Below, piece by piece: positions 5,546 through 36,400 of a stretch of DNA of 64,000 bases. This DNA comes from Blepharisma stoltei ATCC 30299 (lineage: Eukaryota; Protista; Ciliophora). A program made the position numbers and the translations under genes. Every line of letters starts with the position of its first letter. Position 1 is the stretch's first letter. Location of the stretch: NCBI GenBank assembly GCA_965603825.1, contig CBFDEM010000057.1, positions 124,001 to 188,000 of the forward strand, given 5' to 3'. Under the pieces are notes generated by a model. That model had not been told where the DNA came from. It saw only the letters and a program-made list of their open reading frames with translations, and did no database searches.

Positions 5546-6424
5546 ATGACTTTTAAAGCCTCTTTTGGAGAATCGCCTCACGAAAATATTTTTAAAGTCT
5601 CTGTCCAAACAGACTCCACAAGTTGCGATACTTATAACAACACTTATTTACCAGAATTCTCACAGCACCGATCCTCGAACTCTCTCTCCAAAGATCTTTC
5701 CGATTCCCAGCTAAACAATTCTCAAATACGCCCTGGCTCAGACACTTTAAATATAAAAAACAAAAAGTGCATTATCTGCAACAAAGGCATCGGGTTACGA
5801 AAAAGTAACTACACCTGTAAAGTCTGTCACAATTATGCATGCTCTGATCACTCCTTTAAAAAACTTCTCAATTCCTCCTCAAGCAAGCCTCAAAGAATTT
5901 GCCAAAATTGTGATTCAAAAGAAACAGAAGAAGCTGTAAAGCTTCATACCAAAAGCTTTACAGATGAAGCTGTCAGGATGGACAATGAGCTGCAGAACGC
6001 AAAAAATTATTATATAGATATAAATAAAGACAGAAAAGAGAAAAAGTTGCTGATAAAAAAACTAGAAATAGAAAGAGAAGGACTTGAGAGAATTCATATT
6101 CAAAAGAAAACTAGGCTGCATGAGCAGCTAGAGAAAGAAGTCCAAGAAGGACTGAAATTAAAAGAATCTGTTGAAAGCTTAGAAAAAGACCGGATTGATA
6201 GAGAAAACGATTATTTAGGGCTAAAAGAAAAATGTGAAGAAAAACAACAGTATATTCGTGCTATGCAAGAAAAATTGGAAATATTAAATAAAAGAAAAGA
6301 GCTAGTATTGATTCAAACCAAAACAATTGATAAAAAGATTGAAAAAGATGAAGAAATGCGAAAGAAACTTGAGAAACTGTGTAAGAAATGCTATAGTAGA
6401 ACAAGAAGCTTTAGAAATATCTAA
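5546..6424 (+). CDS. FYVE-like zinc finger plus coiled-coil protein
   Basis: CIIC...CKVC..ACSDHS...RICQNC, then an E/K heptad region. Lacks the RHHCR PI3P motif. Start could be 5510. Confidence 0.7.
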   Translation: MTFKASFGESPHENIFKVSVQTDSTSCDTYNNTYLPEFSQHRSSNSLSKDLSDSQLNNSQIRPGSDTLNIKNKKCIICNKGIGLRKSNYTCKVCHNYACSDHSFKKLLNSSSSKPQRICQNCDSKETEEAVKLHTKSFTDEAVRMDNELQNAKNYYIDINKDRKEKKLLIKKLEIEREGLERIHIQKKTRLHEQLEKEVQEGLKLKESVESLEKDRIDRENDYLGLKEKCEEKQQYIRAMQEKLEILNKRKELVLIQTKTIDKKIEKDEEMRKKLEKLCKKCYSRTRSFRNI

Positions 6425-6539
6425 AGATATCAAGTATAAAATATATTTGTTTTTTTATAATCCAAATAAAATTAAAATTATTTTTGACAGTTTATTTAAC
6501 ATTCGAAAAAATTCCAACATTTTATAAATTACTAATCAA

Positions 6540-7307
6540 ATGAGCAAACCTTTTCAAGCATTTTCCTTTAAGCCTAATAACTTATATCAACAAAACAGGC
6601 TATTACCCCCAACCTCATGCAGAACCCCAAGCACATGCTCACGATCTGAAAAGAATAGCAGCAAAGACAAGGGTTTAAAAGACTATGGTGAAGTAATTTT
6701 GCAAGCAAAATCATTTATAAACTTGGTATCTCATAGGCAAAAACTTCGAGATTTGCTTAAGAAAACTAAGAGAGACTCGAAATCTCCAAGTTTATTTTTA
6801 TTAAAGCCAAGTTCAGATATGAACGAATTCCCAGAAATTAAGAAGAGCAAAAGGAGCACAAAATCAATAAGTGTTTTAGCAAAAAATAAATGTAAATTGG
6901 TATATGAAAATAAAAGGAGCTCAGAAGAATACCAGAAAGGCGGGATTTCGTGAATTCACTATAAGCCAATTGTTATAAATGAAAGCCCAGCATTTAGAGC
7001 AAAAAGTTGCAATAATGAATCCCCAAAGAAAGAGGAAAAAATAAGAAACCTGATTTTATCTGAAGAAAATTCTACAAAAAATTCCTATATATTATCTAAA
7101 GTAAAAGCAATATCAGGAAATGAAAATAAAAAGCTAATCTCAAAAAATAAACGGCACAGAGAAAGAGTAAAAACAGAAGTTTCAGAGAATAATGATGCAG
7201 AAGAAAATGAATATATAAAATCTTTGCTGATTCCCACTTATTCCAAATATGAATGTGAGCCCGCTGAAGATGACAGCCCTACCTTGGAATTTCAGCCCAG
7301 GTATTAA
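6540..7307 (+). CDS. Hypothetical basic low-complexity protein (255 aa, one UGA=Trp)
   Basis: Frame stays open through TGA 6951 to TAA 7305-7307. Confidence 0.7.
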
Positions 7308-7360
7308 TTGTAAATATGTATTTTTCCATTATTACAATTAAATAATATTTTAAGAAATAT

Positions 7361-8377
7361 TTACATATTAAAAAGGAAAGTTATTGTCGTGATTTCTTCA
7401 AAAATCCTCTTGGCTTCTTCGAATTTTGCTCTCTGTATTGATGAGCCAACAGATTTAATTTTATTTTGCCATCTTTGCAAAACCCCTTCTTCTGATAAAA
7501 ATATATTTCTGTTAACTCCAGGCGCAAAAAAGAAGATTACACTCGCGTCATCTAAAATCTGTGTATTTTCTTCAATAATTTCAATAATATTTTCTTTATG
7601 CTTTTGCTCGTTTGCTCTTCTTATTTGAGAGCCTATTGATTTTATTCCTCCTTTAGTCTTATCAGCAGTGCTTTGCCTTTGTCCTTGTTTTCCTCTTACC
7701 ACATATTTTTTATCAGATTTATGGAAGGTGCATTTTCCATTTTCATCAAAATTTGCAATAGAAAATGACCCACCAAGGCAAAGAATTATTACAATATTTC
7801 CTTGATTCCTTAAGAATTTCAAAGAATTATCGTCAATTTTGAGCTCATGGCTGAGCTCATTATTTTTAATTTTTTGTAAGATATCTTGTTGCCGTTTTAA
7901 GAGAGCATTTTTGTCTGTGAAATCAATTGCATTAAATTCATCTGAAGATGAAAGCCAAGTTATAGGGTTTATTTCTTTGCCTTCTTCGTTAGATATTAAA
8001 GGATTTGCAATAGAAATTTCATCGTTGAAGTCATTTGTGAAGGTTTTCGTTCCACTGGTGGCATCAGAACTGTTAAAGGTGTAGTGGATTGAAAATAATT
8101 CTTTTGGAAAATTATAAATTTGCTGAGAAACTACGAGGAAATCTTTATTGTTTTTGTGAATAGTGGTTAATCGTGCTTTTTTCTTGTTGTTGAATTGGAG
8201 AGCTCGAAGAAAAGTGCTTCTTAAGCTACTGTATTTGATTTTTTTATCGTATTCAGGAATTAAAGTGGCTTTTATGGAGGCATAAAGGTGTTTTGAACTT
8301 ATAGCCAAATTAAATCTTTCCTGTCGGTTTATATAAGATGCGATGCACTCTATGGACGAATCTTTTAAGCTGTGCAT
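7361..8377 (-). CDS. Vms1/ANKZF1-type VLRF1 domain protein with a possible N-terminal F-box
   Basis: GGSFSIA, HKSDKKYVVRGKQGQRQSTAD..KSIGSQIRRANE, IFFFAPG match the VLRF1 catalytic-loop pattern. ATG 8377. Confidence 0.85.
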   Translation of the reverse strand: MHSLKDSSIECIASYINRQERFNLAISSKHLYASIKATLIPEYDKKIKYSSLRSTFLRALQFNNKKKARLTTIHKNNKDFLVVSQQIYNFPKELFSIHYTFNSSDATSGTKTFTNDFNDEISIANPLISNEEGKEINPITWLSSSDEFNAIDFTDKNALLKRQQDILQKIKNNELSHELKIDDNSLKFLRNQGNIVIILCLGGSFSIANFDENGKCTFHKSDKKYVVRGKQGQRQSTADKTKGGIKSIGSQIRRANEQKHKENIIEIIEENTQILDDASVIFFFAPGVNRNIFLSEEGVLQRWQNKIKSVGSSIQRAKFEEAKRIFEEITTITFLFNM

Positions 8378-26943: not shown

Positions 26944-27474
26944 ATGAAAAGTGTAAGAGTCAGAACTGCTTCTGCTAGAAAACCGGCAAAGAAAAAAGCA
27001 AGCAGGCGTGAAGAGCTTAGTCATGAGCATACTAAGGATATAAAAGAAGCTTTTGATTTATTCGATATTTCAGGTGCTGGCACAATTGAAGGAAAAGAGC
27101 TTAGAGTTGCTTTACGGGCTTTAGGATTTGACCCATCTAAAGAAGAAATAGAGCAGCTAGTAGGAACTGCAACGCAAACTGGAAGGATTGATTTTCATGA
27201 GTTTCTTGACATTATAATCAATAAAGTAAGCGAGCCAGATACCCCAGAAGACATTGAGCGAGCTTTTGCAATGCTTGATTTAGACAGCAATGGAGTCATT
27301 ACAAAAGAAAGTTTACAAAAAGTTATAAGTGAGCTTGGAGAAGACATGAGTGAAGAAGAAATCGAAAAAATGATAAGAGTAGCCCAGAAAGGATCAAAAG
27401 GATCCAAAGAAAAACGCAAGCTTGAAGTGACTTTTAATGAATTTTTGGGAATTATGAATAAAGCTGATAATTAA
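26944..27474 (+). CDS. Centrin/caltractin-like EF-hand protein (divergent)
   Basis: [26 protein letters not shown]; IDFHEF; AF..LDLDSNG.I; [15 protein letters not shown]. Confidence 0.9.
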
Positions 27475-27481
27475 TTAAAAT

Positions 27482-28624
27482 ATGTCAAAAACATTTAAAT
27501 CATTCAATCAAGAAGAAAATCAGCAAAGTGATTATAAAAATCTTGACAAACCTTTGACAAGGACCACTCAATTGAGCCCAATAACTGATCTGCAAACCAA
27601 ATTAAATGTCTTGAACCGGGAAAATCAACAATTAAAATCAGAAATATGTGATAAAGTTGTAGAAGCCCAAGAATTGCAAGCAGAATTAACTGCAATTCGA
27701 GAGCTAAACGACATTAAAGACCAAAACTTAAGCAAACTTAAAGAAGAGCTAAAACAGGCTACAACTGCTAATAGTAAAGCAGCAGGCGAACAGCGTTTTC
27801 TTCAAGAACAAATGCTGCTATTTCAGCAAGAGCAAGAACAGCTATTAGATGACTATGAACAAGCCTTAGCTAAAATTGAAGTTTTATCAAAAGAAAAAAA
27901 TCAAGCTTTATTCCAATTAGAAGAATTAAATACTCGATGCCATTTTTTGGAACGGCAAAATGAAGACTTGACTAATAGCAAAAACCAGGACAGTTCAGAA
28001 ATTTATCAGCTCAGGACACAACTAAAAGAAAAAAATGAGGAGGTTTTTGCATCAAAGCAACAATTGGAAAATTTAAGGAATGAGGCGAAAGGGTATATTG
28101 ATGAACTTCATCATATGCATCAAATTAATGAAAGATCAGAAGAAACTGCCAAAGGGCTAAGGGAGGAAATTAGAAGGCTGCAGAGTCAGATGGATGAACA
28201 GTTTTTAAAGACTCAAAATACTGAAAGAGAAATGATGAAAGCTAGAGAAATGAGCGGAGAGTTAAAAAACATTGAAAGAGATAACAGGAGGTTAGAGGAG
28301 CAACTGAGAGAGTCAAACTTAATGCTAAGCCAAAAAGATGCAGATTTAGAAGGAAGATACACAGAAATATCAAAACTCCAAAAATCAAATAAAGAGTTAA
28401 GGGATGACAATTATACGTTATCAAGCAAACTTGTAGAATTTGAAAATGAAAATGAAAGACTGAGAAGGTCAAATGATGAATTCAGAATTAGGGTTGATTA
28501 TTTAAGTGAAAACGATAAAGAAATCAGAGGATATTTGAGTAGAAAAGAAAAAATGCTGAGAATTAGAGAACAAGCAGAAAGAGAGCTGCAGGACGCTCTT
28601 GATTCTTTCAGCTCAACTAAGTAA
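27482..28624 (+). CDS. Long coiled-coil protein
   Basis: 380-aa uninterrupted ORF with continuous heptads. Confidence 0.85.
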   Translation: MSKTFKSFNQEENQQSDYKNLDKPLTRTTQLSPITDLQTKLNVLNRENQQLKSEICDKVVEAQELQAELTAIRELNDIKDQNLSKLKEELKQATTANSKAAGEQRFLQEQMLLFQQEQEQLLDDYEQALAKIEVLSKEKNQALFQLEELNTRCHFLERQNEDLTNSKNQDSSEIYQLRTQLKEKNEEVFASKQQLENLRNEAKGYIDELHHMHQINERSEETAKGLREEIRRLQSQMDEQFLKTQNTEREMMKAREMSGELKNIERDNRRLEEQLRESNLMLSQKDADLEGRYTEISKLQKSNKELRDDNYTLSSKLVEFENENERLRRSNDEFRIRVDYLSENDKEIRGYLSRKEKMLRIREQAERELQDALDSFSSTK

Positions 28625-30084: not shown

Positions 30085-30100
30085 TTATAGACACAAAGTC
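30085..30100. repeat. Target-site duplication, left copy TTATAGACACAAAGTC
   Basis: Identical to 31708-31723. Confidence 0.92.
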
Positions 30101-30261
30101 TATTCTATTCTATTAAATATAACAGTGCATGCACTGTTGAAGCTCTTATGAGCTTTTAAACAATCAATCTGTAATTTTAGTTTGCTTTGGTCGTTGCTTC
30201 AGGTTTCTGGTTGTATTCCTTTCGCTTTAATTCCTTGTATGTTGACATGGCTAGTAGTTTT

Positions 30262-31691
30262 TAGTCTGCTACGCTCCTCATTTCTAGTTTTCTTTTCTTG
30301 AATAACCTGCTTCAGTCATCATTCTCTTCTTCGGAATCGATAATGGTGACAACTTGACTTGTTGTGATGACGACTCCTGTGTTGGTGGCATGACTTAAAG
30401 TGCTGATGCAATTTTCATTGATAATATAACTTGCGGTGGTGGTTCAGTTTGTATTGGTGGCGCGACTTGTAGCGGAAGCGTGTCTTGTATTGTCGGTGCG
30501 TCCTGTAATGATGACATGACTTGTAGCGATGGCTTAACTTGCAACGATGGCATTACTTGTAGCGGCGGTGTGTTTGGTGTTGATGTCATGACTTGTAGTC
30601 GCGTCATGTCTTGTTGTGATGACGAACCTTGTATTGTTGACATAACTTGCAGTGTTGGTTCAATCCGTGATGATGCCATGACTTGTGATGGTGTCATGAC
30701 TTGTGATGACGATGAATCTTGCAGCGGTTGCTTGATTTGCAGAGTCGGTACATCTTGCAATGACGACACGACTTGTGGTGGTGGTTTAACCTGCACGTAC
30801 GCTAAACTACTTAGCTTATCCTGTTCGTCAGTCTGCATTTTGTCTTTTTTTATCCCTTCCCTTGCTAGCTTGCTGATCCTTTTTTCTTCCTCCTTCTTTT
30901 CCCTATTGGCTCGGCTTTTTTCCTGCATTCTTCTCTCTTTGCTTTCAGTTTTGCGTGCCCTTTCTCGTTATGTCCTATTTCCCCGCATGTAGCACAAAAA
31001 AGAGTTGCTGTATGATTGAGTCACACTTTTCTGTTCCTGATTATTATCTCATCCGTCAGATCCAAGGCTTTTTCTAATGTCTCGAATTCCAAATAAAAGG
31101 CGTACCTAGAGTTTGTGCTGAAATGTGCGTTGTAACTTTTCCCTTCTGAGCTTATCACGTCGTCTACTGCTACTTCTACAACCTTGCCTACCTTATTTAG
31201 TTCCTGAATAATTTCTTCCACAGCAATCCCAGTCGGCACTACTACTTGCACCCTGTAGCTAACGTAGTTAATTTCTCCCTCCTTTAATGCAGGACCCAGT
31301 GGAACCATTATTCTTTTCCCTTCATGCTGTACCGTTAGCTTTCCTCTCCTCTTTAGTTCTTTTAGCGCATCTTCGTCCGCAATGTTACTACTGCATCCCC
31401 TGAGGGTAATTTAATGCCCCTAATTAGGTCTCCATCTCTAGTGGCTGCCTCCAGTGCTACAACAAATGAGCAGTATAAGTTCCGCTTCTTCTCTTCATCT
31501 CCCTTTCTTAGATATTTCGATAAATAAAATTTCAATGTTCATTCTAGGCATGCCGAGTCTTCCAGTTGTGGCAAAGTGTTGATGGGAGCACTGAAGCTAT
31601 AACAGAATCCATCCCTACCAAATCCCAGGACTTGGAGTTCCTCGTCCTTTGCGGCTCTGAGAGTTGTCTGTTTTTGCTTGTCACTCCACAT
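30262..31691 (-). pseudogene. Disrupted LINE ORF1-like gene (RRM-like region, CX2CX4HX4H knuckle, hexapeptide repeats)
   Basis: ATG 31691 MWSDKQ...; frameshift ~31381; CATCGEIGHNEKGH at 30995-30955; frameshift ~30930; apparent CAA>TAA at 30395 inside the LQVM repeat. The original stop position is uncertain. Confidence 0.75.
30383..30796 (-). repeat. Degenerate 18-bp tandem repeat encoding xxLQVM-type hexapeptides
   Basis: Gln recurs about every 6 residues (PPLQVM PSLQVK PSLQVM SSLQDA PTIQDT ...). Confidence 0.85.
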
Positions 31692-31707
31692 CCGAATAAA
31701 TAAAACG

Positions 31708-31723
31708 TTATAGACACAAAGTC
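31708..31723. repeat. Target-site duplication, right copy TTATAGACACAAAGTC
   Basis: Identical to 30085-30100. Confidence 0.92.
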
Positions 31724-33434: not shown

Positions 33435-36400
33435 ATGTGGAAATATTTCCTTTTAGTTTGCTGCTCAGCTTTACGATTGTTCATAATACCTCATTCTCAT
33501 TGTGATCCTGGCTGGCTAGAGCCAGTGGACTGATACTATGAAAACAAAGTAAGAAATATTTTCAACAATTTAATAGAATTGCTTCAAGAAAACAATCAAA
33601 GGAAATTCGCATGATCTGAAATTTCATTTTTAAAGATGTGAATGGATGAACAAAATATTTTGAAGAAAAATGCTTTAAGATCGCTCATACAGTCTGGTAG
33701 AATAGAAATTGTTGGAGGCGGGTTTGTGCAGAATGATGAAGCGAATACTGATTTTGATATGATCATAAGGCAGTTTGATAGTGGAAGAGACTATTTATAT
33801 CAAGAGTTTGGGATAGAAAATGTGAAAGTGGGATGGCAAATTGACCCGTTTGGGCATTCAGCGCTTACACCTTCTTTGTGAGCAAAATTAGGGTTCGAGT
33901 ATCTTGTAATTAATAGGATCAGCAAACCTTTGAAAGTAGATTATATATAGAAAATATGAAGAAGGAAAAATAACTTAGAATTCTTATGGGAAGGGTCTGA
34001 TCTTGGGTCAAATAATACAATTTTTACGCATATTTTGTATGATCATTATGATTTCCCTGATATTTTGCATCCTTTAAAAAAAGAATTATGCTTGAGCACA
34101 ATTGATATAGCAAATGTGTCAGAGTGGTAATTTTAACTTAGTGCTAGCAAGCTTTACAATCTTGTAAATAAACAAAAACATGCATACAGCACAGAAAATA
34201 TTATGATGCTATATGGTGACGATTTTTATTATCACGATCTCGCTGAGTCAAAACTTTTATATCAAAGAATAGAGCTCCTAAGAGACTATATCAACCATTA
34301 CTATTGAAATTTCACCATAAAAATTGCTACACCATCCGAATACTTTGAAGCTGTTAAAGCAGAAAGCCCAGAATTGCCTTATTTTACATCTGATTTTTTC
34401 CCATACATGAACTACTTCAATATGAAAAATAACTACTGGACTGGATACTATACCACAAGACCTCGTCTAAAAAATGAGGTCTATTTTGGACACAGACTTG
34501 CAAGAGCTGCTGAAATCGCTATGGCTTTTACTTCAAAATCAAGTCTTAATTCTCCTCAAGCAAGTATTTCCCTTCATCATGATGCAATTACAGGAACTTG
34601 TAGAGACCATGTAGCTGCTGACTATATGTACAGGCTGAAAAAAGATATAGTAAATTCTATCCATGCAATCGAATTTGTGCTAAAAAATGTTTTGACTGAA
34701 GCTAAAAATGAATTCGCTTTAGCAGTTTCTTATAGAGTTTTGATTGCTTATAATCCTTTAAATTGAGAAAAAGATGAATTATTTTCAATTAAAGCTGAAA
34801 CAAATGATATTGAAATTATAAATTGAAAAGGAAAAGTCGTAAAATCTCAAGCTGTAAAAAATGTGATAGATGGGGGATATATTATTTATTTTAAAGCAAA
34901 ATTGCCTTCTCTTTCATTTTTTACTATTTTTGTGAGATATTGTTTTGCTTGCACTGATTTATCAGCTGAATACGAAGGATATAGTTTGGCTGATAAAATA
35001 TATAAATTGCATTTTGATCAAAACGGGATGCTGGATTTTATATTTAGCAAAAAACTTGAAATTATCCCAAAAACCAATAATTCACATCAGAAAATAAAAA
35101 ATAAAATGCACGAATTCCGCCTTAGACAGCAAATTTTTGCATATAAAGGAGAAAGCAGTGGAGCTTATATTTTTCATCCTACTGTAATTTTAATCTAGGG
35201 ATATGCTGAAAACTTAGAGCTTAGCCTTGAACAAATTATGATTTCAAGTGGCAAAGTTGTACAAACTGCACAAATTATTTGGTACCGCAAAGATGATAAA
35301 TCAAAATATTTTTACCAGAAATTTATATTATATGACTCAGAAAAGTTTATATGAAAAATAGGTGTAAGTGCTGTACAAAATGAAGAAATAACGGTTAGAT
35401 TTGAAAGTCAAGATGAAAACGTGATTGATATTTTTACATTTAATTCAGCAGATTTAAGGCAAAGAGAGCACATAGAAGAAATTTATGCGTCTAGAGTAGG
35501 AAAAAATATGTATCCAGTTCCTGCAGGGGCAGTTGCAAAATCTAAAAATTCTTATTTAAAGTTTTACCCGAAATTTCCATTAGGAATCGGCGTGGTCTCT
35601 CCTAAGAGTTTTGAGTTCTTATTACAAAGAAATCTCTCAAATGATGACTTATGCGGATTAGGAGTTGGAGTTACAGATATCACAATAGCTGAGCATACAA
35701 TGCACGTAGAGCTTGGCAATTTAATCCATGAAGAATTTTGGAGAAATTATTTAAATGCAAAAACTGAGTCTTATTTATTTCCATTAAAAGATGCAGGAAA
35801 ATATGCATTAAGTCTTGAAGATTGAGAAGAAGCAGAAGTTTTAAATGAGCCTTGGAAAAAGAAAACTGAATTTTATATGGGATTTGAGGATAATAGGGTT
35901 TATCTGTCAAGTGCTGTAATAAAGGATTCAGAAATTTTTATGAGAGTATTGAATTTTAATTCGGTTGGGATTGGATTTGATGTGATTGGAGGAAAAGTTT
36001 CAAATAAAACGAATCTAGCAGGATATCAAGCTTTAAATGAAACGCATAATTGGAAAAATTCTGGTGAAATGTTTGATGAATTTAAAAACATCAGTCAGCC
36101 TGCAATAAAGATGCAAACTAAGCAGATTATGACGCTTGACAGTGGGCAAGCTTTAAAACCAATGGAGCTAGCAGCGTTTTATATTGATATCAATAAATTC
36201 CCATATGAAAGAAAAATTCATGAAAAATCGAATAAAGAGTTTTCGGCAAGACCAAATGATATAACAAAGCCTTATAGAGAGCTTCTTGAGCATGAAATAG
36301 TATATATTGAAACCTCTAATAAACCTCAATACAATATACTCCACCTATCCTTTATATTTCTTATCTTTTTTGCCCCTGCATACACTGTCTTATTCTATCA

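What the first reader, a model, noticed from the sequence alone, without database searches (positions are those of the whole stretch)
30085..31723. ORF1-only non-LTR retroelement with a perfect 16-bp target-site duplication
Seen: 1607 bp flanked by two identical TTATAGACACAAAGTC copies, visibly richer in GC/CpG than its flanks, oriented on the minus strand. It has a 16-nt leader, one long disrupted ORF, hairpins and a microsatellite tail. No RT (YxDD), APE endonuclease or transposase is visible, and there are no TIRs or LTRs. Known: long TSDs with a 3' simple-repeat tail are the signature of target-primed reverse transcription; ordinary 5' truncation removes ORF1 first and keeps the ORF2 end; ORF1-only derivatives (HAL1, 'half-L1') are described in other eukaryotes. 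Inference: this is a complete non-autonomous element that keeps its own ORF1 and borrows RT in trans, sitting in a ciliate somatic genome that normally purges transposons. I know of no description of such an element in ciliates, but cannot check that here.
Basis: partly seen in the sequence, partly recalled or inferred. Interest (0 to 1): 0.88.

Follow-up and report, generated by a model that had tools for sequence, protein, structure and literature searches.

The report
Endonuclease/RT-less LINE derivative in Blepharisma
This is a real but decayed 1.6-kb copy of a resident Blepharisma stoltei LINE that keeps both ends and the N-terminal RNA-binding-like part and lacks the endonuclease and reverse transcriptase. 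It is a known kind of non-autonomous retroelement, in a genome whose somatic LINEs are already published.

Summary
A 1607-bp GC-richer element lies on the minus strand between two perfect 16-bp copies. It has a 16-nt leader, a broken reading frame, two 3' hairpins and an (AATAG)n tail, and no RT, APE, TIRs or LTRs.

The genome is Blepharisma stoltei (UGA = Trp). Its somatic non-LTR retrotransposons are already published (PMC9942856).

The "ORF1" is the N-terminal module of those LINEs. In full copies it sits in the same reading frame as APE-RT. Here it carries at least three frameshifts and a stop.

The junction joins about APE codon 19 to the last 23 codons of ORF2.

The public hybrid MAC+IES (germline-like) assembly of this locus has the same junction. 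So APE-RT was not removed as an IES. Only a 57-nt IES lies inside the element.

At least three further LINE derivatives keep both ends and lack APE-RT. Two have their own 15-16-bp duplications, and one of those lies inside an IES.

The breakpoints of the most similar one match ours only to within about 20-55 nt. A tree of the 5' parts neither supports nor clearly rejects common descent.

Verdict: a genuine TPRT-inserted, non-autonomous deletion derivative, like HAL1 or RIME. Trans-mobilisation as a family is plausible but unproven. Interest is moderate.

The parts
30085..30100 (.). Target-site duplication, copy next to the element's 3' tail
   Evidence: Exact 16-mer, only two copies in the window. 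Also present in the hybrid MAC+IES locus L070.
30101..30114 (-). Short microsatellite tail, (AATAG)n on the element strand
   Evidence: TRF period 5, 3.2 copies. Relatives carry (AATAG)4, (TAGA)n or (GTAA)n tails.
30122..30154 (-). 3' module: hairpin 2 (30122-30137) and hairpin 1 (30141-30154). The ORF2 stop codon (30146-30148) lies in the loop of hairpin 1.
   Evidence: Folding. On 8 elements, including APE/RT-bearing C60, C45 and C25: 94% of cells paired, 10 of 12 pairs with compensatory changes, 0 of 500 shuffles as good, slid controls 25-47%.
30101..30217 (-). Retained 3' end: last 23 codons of ORF2, the stop, the 3' UTR and the tail
   Evidence: 95% identical over 118 nt to a 542-bp 5'-truncated copy on contig C43. 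That copy carries the ORF2 C-terminal CCHC region and its own 13-15-bp duplication.
30218..30274 (-). Remnant of the first ~19 codons at the start of the APE endonuclease domain, ending at the deletion junction (30217/30218)
   Evidence: Aligns with the APE start of the C50:352k copy, where the Pfam endonuclease match follows directly. The junction is identical in the germline-like assembly.
30355..30793 (-). Linker with an 18-nt (hexapeptide) repeat array
   Evidence: the repeat finder family D1, 12+ copies at 18-nt spacing. A similar array lies upstream of APE in C50:352k and in L068.
30667..30682 (.). Somatic junction of a 57-nt germline-limited segment (IES) bounded by a 16-nt non-TA direct repeat
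   Evidence: Window compared with L070: the hybrid assembly has 57 extra nt here.
30955..30996 (-). Zinc-knuckle-like motif, CX2CX4HX4H (CCHH)
   Evidence: Translation. Weak Pfam zf-CCHC_4, E 0.056, below cut-off. The same CCHH spacing is seen in C50b, C21 and L069.
31024..31410 (-). RRM-like domain of the N-terminal module (annotated 147-aa product P0001 starts inside it)
   Evidence: 25 matches in the genome, in at least 9 loci 2.1-2.5 kb upstream of RVT_1 on the same strand. AF2 model of low confidence (pLDDT 58.7) with a beta-alpha-beta-beta-alpha-beta order. Foldseek top hits are nearly all RRMs, but E is 0.07 or worse. No Pfam family.
31380..31381 (-). 1-nt deletion that breaks the frame between the N-terminal domain and the RRM-like domain
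   Evidence: Nucleotide alignment with C2, C64 and C47, which keep the frame.
31381..31691 (-). N-terminal conserved domain, from the ATG at 31689-31691
   Evidence: tblastn: conserved in about 20 LINE loci, with a shared LPSGDA motif.
31692..31707 (-). 16-nt 5' leader, the true 5' end of the element
   Evidence: The 5' ends of C2, C64b and L068 align from nt 1-3, and their upstream flanks are unrelated.
31708..31723 (.). Target-site duplication, copy next to the element's 5' end

Best explanation
The element is a decayed, non-autonomous deletion derivative of a resident Blepharisma stoltei non-LTR retrotransposon (clade A of the N-terminal-module tree).

Full-length relatives encode one long frame, in this order:
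1. N-terminal domain
2. RRM-like domain
3. CCHH knuckle
4. hexapeptide linker
5. APE endonuclease
6. RT
7. CCHC region

This is followed by a two-hairpin 3' module and a short microsatellite tail.

This copy keeps the complete 5' end through about the 19th codon of the APE start. It then jumps to the last 23 codons of ORF2 plus the 3' module. About 3 kb (APE and RT) is missing.

**Shown**
- It was inserted by target-primed reverse transcription, which gave a 16-bp duplication.
- The deletion is present in the germline-like sequence as well.
- The frame is dead.

**Inferred**
- The element most likely arrived already short. One route is copying from a deleted RNA with APE/RT supplied in trans by an autonomous relative that recognises the shared 3' hairpins. 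The other is an RT template jump across a short microhomology during its own cDNA synthesis.

The identity of the element I hold at about 0.95. That it arrived already short I hold at about 0.6.
For: - **Insertion signature:** duplication, tail and ends.
- **Module belongs to the LINEs:** N-terminal-module homologues lie upstream of APE and RVT_1 on the same strand in at least 9 loci. A 1320-aa frame in C21 spans module to RT.
- **Junction:** mapped against the APE start of C50:352k and the ORF2 end of the C43 copy, with a microhomology zone of about 9 nt.
- **Germline status:** the hybrid MAC+IES locus L070 is identical across the junction and shows only a 57-nt IES inside the element.
- **Shared 3' hairpins:** they covary across APE/RT-less and APE/RT-bearing elements.
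- **More derivatives:** further end-complete, APE/RT-less elements exist.
  - C50:475297-476816 has a 15-bp duplication.
  - L068 5533-6992 has a 16-bp duplication, the same architecture and a nearby breakpoint.
  - L069 also lacks APE-RT.
Against: - Only one copy of this form exists in the somatic genome.
- The junction of the most similar element (L068) cannot be shown to be identical. Alignment is ambiguous within about 20 nt on the 5' side and about 55 nt on the 3' side.
- Holding ours and L068 as one clade costs 7 lnL, AU p = 0.064.
- Other copies carry internal deletions of many different extents (C2, C45, C47, L072). A later, random germline deletion therefore remains possible.
- No autonomous copy with a closely similar (over 85%) 3' end was found in the soma.
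- The C43 fragment could itself come from a short derivative.
Confidence: 0.6

Rival explanations
1. A full-length (~4.7 kb) LINE inserted here. Its APE-RT part was later lost through an ordinary germline deletion between short microhomologies. The element never moved in its short form.
For: - Internal deletions of varied extent are common among copies of this LINE group.
- The junction has a microhomology zone.
- The somatic genome holds a single copy of this form.
- The frame is heavily decayed, so the copy is not young.
Against: - At least four independent elements keep both exact ends while losing precisely APE-RT. Ascertainment favoured finding such elements, so this is weak.
- Two of them (ours and L068) break within a few codons of the same APE position.
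- The perfect 16/16 duplication argues against great age.
Confidence: 0.3
2. The germline copy is full length, and the APE-RT part is removed as an internal eliminated sequence (IES) each time the somatic nucleus develops.
For: - Six copies of another family carry a 173-182-bp IES inside the APE domain (PMC9942856 supplement).
- A TA dinucleotide lies in the junction zone.
- The locus is dense in IESs.
Against: - The hybrid MAC+IES assembly of this very locus is colinear and identical across the junction, while 14 other IESs are resolved within 15 kb. One of them is a 57-nt IES inside the element.
- The TA sits 3-4 nt inside the 3' homology rather than at its edge.
Confidence: 0.04
3. The stretch is a domesticated host gene derived from the LINE's N-terminal module and makes a functional RNA-binding protein.
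For: A 147-aa product (P0001) is annotated here in the public record.
Against: - The conserved module is split by a 1-nt deletion and further frameshifts. P0001 starts in the middle of the RRM-like domain.
- Intact retroelement termini, tail and duplication remain.
- The paper reports negligible expression of the RVT_1- and endonuclease-domain genes. This copy has neither domain, so that is indirect.
Confidence: 0.03

Closest known systems
Non-LTR retrotransposon families of the Blepharisma stoltei somatic and germline genomes (Seah et al. 2023, PMC9942856)
   Same: - Same organism.
- Same APE + RVT_1 elements as the relatives found here.
- Present in the soma.
- Some copies are edited by IES excision.
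   Different: - The paper's main text and its held supplement do not mention an ORF1, RRM or zinc-knuckle module, target-site duplications, the 3' hairpins, or end-complete APE/RT-less derivatives.
- This copy has no RT, so an RT-based survey would not list it.
HAL1 ('half-L1'), the non-autonomous L1 derivative encoding only ORF1p in mammals (PMC5753468)
   Same: - It keeps the 5' part with the nucleic-acid-binding protein module and the LINE 3' end, and lacks ORF2 enzymes.
- Such derivatives arose independently several times.
   Different: - HAL1 is a multi-copy family with an open ORF1. Here there is one somatic copy with a broken frame.
- The retained module is the N-terminal part of a single fused frame, not a separate ORF1.
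- There is no sequence relationship to L1 ORF1p.
RIME/ingi and NARTc/L1Tc pairs of trypanosomatids (PMC3820030)
   Same: Short derivatives that parasitise the machinery of the autonomous LINE. From my own knowledge, they consist of the 5' and 3' ends of the autonomous element.
   Different: [quoted passage not shown] This element keeps about 1.4 kb of former coding sequence and is rare.
HeT-A (gag only) relying on another element's RT at Drosophila telomeres (own knowledge, not checked here)
   Same: A non-LTR element that has the Gag/ORF1-like protein and no RT.
   Different: HeT-A is functional, telomere-specific and has an intact ORF. None of that is shown here.
LINE ORF1 proteins built from an RRM plus a CCHC knuckle (Khazina and Weichenrieder classification; own knowledge)
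   Same: Domain order is RRM-like then zinc knuckle, upstream of APE-RT.
   Different: - The knuckle is CCHH.
- No Pfam match.
- The RRM fold is only weakly supported.
- The module is fused in frame to ORF2 in this lineage.

Membership tests
Non-LTR (LINE-type) retroelement inserted by target-primed reverse transcription | Variable-length target-site duplication abutting both element ends | tested here: met
   16/16 bp here. Relatives have 13-15, 15 and 16 bp of different sequence.
Non-LTR (LINE-type) retroelement inserted by target-primed reverse transcription | 3' tail or simple repeat; no LTRs or TIRs | tested here: met
Non-LTR (LINE-type) retroelement inserted by target-primed reverse transcription | Homology to elements encoding APE and RT; 5'-truncated relatives | tested here: met
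   The C43 542-bp truncated copy.
Autonomous LINE | Encodes RT (and endonuclease) | tested here: not met
   [quoted passage not shown] Only ~19 codons at the APE start and 23 ORF2 codons remain.
HAL1-like ORF1-only non-autonomous family | Open reading frame for the ORF1-type protein | tested here: not met
   At least 3 frameshifts and at least 1 stop with UGA = Trp.
HAL1-like ORF1-only non-autonomous family | Several copies with the same internal junction and different target-site duplications | tested here: inconclusive
   - Single copy in the soma.
- One germline-limited element (L068) has the same architecture and a different duplication.
- Its junction matches only within about 20-55 nt, and its phylogeny is unresolved.
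- The full germline could not be searched.
HAL1-like ORF1-only non-autonomous family | 3' end shared with an RT-encoding partner | tested here: met
   - The two-hairpin module covaries with APE/RT-bearing C60, C45 and C25.
- No partner with a near-identical 3' sequence was found in the soma.
IES-excision product (somatic editing scar) | Extra germline sequence at the junction in MIC-derived data | tested here: not met
   The hybrid MAC+IES locus is identical across window 30180-30260. Raw reads could not be examined.
RRM-fold domain | beta-alpha-beta-beta-alpha-beta fold matching solved RRMs | tested here: inconclusive
   The model has pLDDT 58.7. Top Foldseek hits are nearly all RRMs but at E 0.07-0.3.

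The most novel reading that the evidence does not exclude
Blepharisma stoltei harbours a class of 'half-LINEs'. These are end-complete derivatives that have lost APE and RT but keep the N-terminal RNA-binding-like module and the structured 3' recognition hairpins. They are copied in trans by autonomous relatives, in at least two lineages, with some copies tolerated in the soma and others eliminated as IESs. This would be the first HAL1/RIME-type parasitic LINE system described in a ciliate.
Probability: 0.4. Interest if true: 0.5.

Novelty: new member of a known kind. Interest (0 to 1): 0.4.

Why it matters
- **Anatomy:** it adds detail that the published survey of Blepharisma retrotransposons does not give. 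This covers a fused N-terminal nucleic-acid-binding module, a covarying two-hairpin 3' module with the stop codon in a loop, TPRT duplications of 13-16 bp, and recurrent end-complete APE/RT-less derivatives.
- **Trans-mobilisation:** if the short forms are copied in trans, the ciliate has a LINE / non-autonomous-LINE pair comparable to L1/HAL1 or ingi/RIME.
- **Soma versus germline fate:** copies of one type meet different fates. This one stays in the soma apart from a 57-nt IES, while another is wholly inside an IES. That bears on how programmed DNA elimination treats retroelements.
- **This copy:** it is dead and of no evident function.

Tried and rejected
- **Programmed frameshift or 16-nt intron:** considered at the break after the LPSGDA motif. 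Rejected, because close relatives keep the frame and ours simply lacks 1 nt. C50b has a different 5-nt gap.
- **IES removal of APE-RT:** tested against the hybrid assembly and rejected.
- **Fetching larger flanks of related loci:** I worked with the loci already held. I also used loci that the look-up of encoding contigs returned for homologous or neighbouring proteins. These proved to come from the hybrid MAC+IES assembly GCA_914767885.1.
- **Look-ups left blank:** P0001 and the adjacent 196-aa gene returned nothing.
- **Protein searches:**
  - Pfam gave no family.
  - A full HMMER scan of 1.8 billion representatives gave only 9 hits.
  - Word-indexed searches gave almost nothing new.
- **Fold assignment:** stays weak.
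- **TSD hunting around older N-terminal-only fragments** (C58, C7, C14, C39, C25): nothing convincing.
- **Rfam on the unexplained GC-rich stretch next to the C43 copy:** no match.
- **Exotic idea, held at about 0.03-0.05:** the short forms could be retro-copies of soma-edited transcripts. The published six near-identical copies of another family still carry their IES in the germline. That argues that unedited RNA is the usual template.

Full report
**Observation**

The 1607 bp between the copies are GC-richer than the flanks, 0.41-0.47 against 0.21-0.29, and richer in CpG.

- On the minus strand a 16-nt leader precedes an ATG.
- The far end carries two hairpins and an (AATAG)3 tail.
- There are no TIRs or LTRs, only an 18-nt array at 30355-30793.
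- Whole-genome scans place no RVT_1 or endonuclease match in the element.

**Organism and code**

The assembly has 41.46 Mb in 64 contigs. A receiver-domain gene in a related locus reads TGA in frame. Homologous proteins are named Blepharisma stoltei by their source. UGA is therefore read as Trp. All translations below use that code.

Somatic non-LTR retrotransposons of this species are already published: three repeat families, with APE plus RVT_1 in the longest genes. Some copies are partly excised. Six copies carry a 173-182-bp IES inside the endonuclease domain (PMC9942856). The premise that this soma is free of transposons does not hold here.

**What the "ORF1" is**

The RRM-like piece (window 31024-31410, minus strand) has 25 matches in the genome. 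In at least nine loci it lies 2.1-2.5 kb upstream of an RVT_1 match on the same strand, with an endonuclease match in between.

- In C21 one 1320-aa frame runs from this module through APE and RT.
- In C40 and C64 the frame also continues from the module into APE.

The module is therefore the N-terminal part of a single long frame, not a separate ORF1. It consists of:

- an N-terminal domain conserved in about 20 loci;
- an RRM-like domain;
- a CX2CX4HX4H knuckle.

It has no Pfam family. A full HMMER scan of 1.8 billion representatives gave only nine hits. Those hits include two non-Blepharisma contigs, and in one of them the module precedes an endonuclease gene. A low-confidence model (pLDDT 58.7) gives mostly RRM proteins as top Foldseek hits, at non-significant E-values.

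**State of the copy**

The break after the LPSGDA motif is a plain 1-nt deletion relative to C2, C64 and C47. Further shifts follow the knuckle and precede the APE remnant, and there is at least one stop in the linker. The annotated 147-aa product P0001 starts in the middle of the RRM-like domain. The coding capacity is dead.

**The junction**

Upstream of window 30217/30218 the element matches the linker and the first ~19 codons at the APE start of the C50:352k copy. Downstream it matches, at 95% over 118 nt, the end of a 542-bp 5'-truncated copy on C43. That copy carries the ORF2 C-terminal CCHC region and its own 13-15-bp duplication. So about 3 kb is missing, and the last 23 ORF2 codons, the stop and the 3' UTR remain. 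A zone of about 9 nt at the junction is compatible with both sides.

**The 3' module**

The two hairpins recur in eight elements. Three of these still have APE and RT (C60, C45, C25).

| Measure | Result |
|---|---|
| Cells paired | 94% |
| Pairs with changes on both sides | 10 of 12 |
| Shuffles reaching the observed values | 0 of 500 |
| Cells paired in slid registers | 25-47% |

The ORF2 stop codon sits in the loop of hairpin 1. This is the likely handle for the reverse transcriptase. It makes mobilisation by a relative's enzyme mechanistically plausible, as an inference.

**Germline status**

However, a look-up of a neighbouring EF-hand protein returned the same locus from GCA_914767885.1 (L070).

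Compared with the window, that record has 14 extra segments bounded by TA or longer direct repeats. This fits the hybrid MAC+IES assembly described in the paper's methods. Across the APE/3'-end junction it is identical to the window. Inside the element it differs only by a 57-nt segment at 30667-30682, bounded by a 16-nt non-TA repeat.

The loss of APE-RT is therefore germline-encoded and is not an IES excision. The caveat is that IES calling could have missed a long insert.

**Relatives of the same build**

| Element | Length | Duplication | What is retained |
|---|---|---|---|
| C50:475297-476816 | 1520 bp | 15 bp | The module fused in frame to the last stretch of ORF2; (TAGA)n tail |
| L068 5533-6992 | 1460 bp | 16 bp | Same order of parts as ours, including the first APE codons; 69% identical over the 5' 700 nt |
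| L069 | not measured | not clear | The module joined to the ORF2 C-terminal ~190 aa |
| L072 | not measured | not checked | Only the first ~116 residues joined to the ORF2 end |

The L068 element is absent from the somatic assembly. It lies inside a 2140-bp segment that the soma lacks, so it is germline-limited.

Derivatives made of a 5' part plus a 3' part therefore recur, with varied breakpoints.

**Is it a replicating family?**

The L068 junction cannot be placed exactly. Its sequence after the shared APE codons aligns about equally well to the APE of C64b and to the ORF2 end. Its breakpoints therefore coincide with ours only within about 20 nt on the 5' side and about 55 nt on the 3' side.

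In a tree of the 5' 870 nt, ours, L068, C64b and C2+C47 form a well-supported but internally unresolved clade. Forcing ours and L068 together costs 7 lnL (AU p = 0.064). The somatic genome holds no second copy of our form. No somatic APE/RT-bearing copy has a closely similar 3' sequence.

I therefore cannot show a HAL1-like lineage. A shared deleted ancestor, recurrent template jumps at the same microhomology, and later deletions all remain possible.

**Comparison and verdict**

The element works like HAL1 (PMC5753468) and like RIME or NARTc (PMC3820030). It keeps the ends that matter for copying and lacks the enzymes.

It fails two defining features of a HAL1-type family as tested here: an open ORF, and several copies with one junction. 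The second test is inconclusive because the whole germline could not be searched.

It is a new member of a known kind in a genome whose LINEs are published. The useful additions are the anatomy of these LINEs and the existence of end-complete APE/RT-less derivatives in both the soma and the eliminated DNA.

Noticed in passing
window 30667-30682; L070 15476-15532: The germline-like assembly has 57 extra nt inside the element, bounded by a 16-nt non-TA direct repeat. The 41-nt core starts like the 5' leader plus ATG of these LINEs, on the opposite strand. It looks like a tiny TSD-flanked insertion that is excised exactly at its duplication.
   Followed up: partly
L070 10404-10962, 11043-11674, 12758-13221, 18623-20521 (window junctions 27325-27346, 27418-27428, 28410-28428, 33757-33772): Four IESs in neighbouring genes are GC-rich (0.36-0.50) and bounded by 11-22-nt direct repeats rather than a bare TA. 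Three start with a similar TATA..ATTAAAATGG motif. They may be retroelement-type insertions removed at their target-site duplications.
   Followed up: partly
L068 5400-7539 (G000:C35 about 140941-140943): A 2140-bp germline-limited segment contains a complete 1460-bp APE/RT-less LINE derivative with both copies of its 16-bp duplication, plus about 650 bp of other sequence.
   Followed up: partly
L003 2048-2430 (G000:C43:219540-219922): A GC-rich ~380-bp stretch of unknown nature lies next to the 542-bp truncated LINE copy, which appears to have inserted into it. No Rfam match and no similarity to the LINE loci held.
   Followed up: partly
L012/L044 (G000:C21:892181-896140): A 1320-aa UGA=Trp frame fuses the N-terminal RRM-like/knuckle module with APE and RT. 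This single-ORF LINE architecture is not mentioned in the published description.
   Followed up: partly
L015/L006 (G000:C50:349001-354069): A LINE copy with linker, APE and RT ends abruptly inside the ORF2 C-terminal region, next to what looks by eye like a SPRY-domain host gene (not checked). A missing 3' end is not what TPRT produces, so it points to a later deletion or somatic editing.
   Followed up: no
L066 (metagenome contig ERZ893784), L067 (GCA_013332795.1), P0007 and P0010 (MMETSP transcripts): The N-terminal module has rare relatives outside B. stoltei. One metagenomic contig has it upstream of an endonuclease gene with a canonical CCHC knuckle. Two transcriptome entries suggest that related elements are transcribed in another organism.
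   Followed up: no
L069 about 6270-8190: A ~1.9-kb element with G/C-run terminal inverted repeats and a TA duplication is nested inside another APE/RT-less LINE derivative in the germline-like assembly.
   Followed up: no
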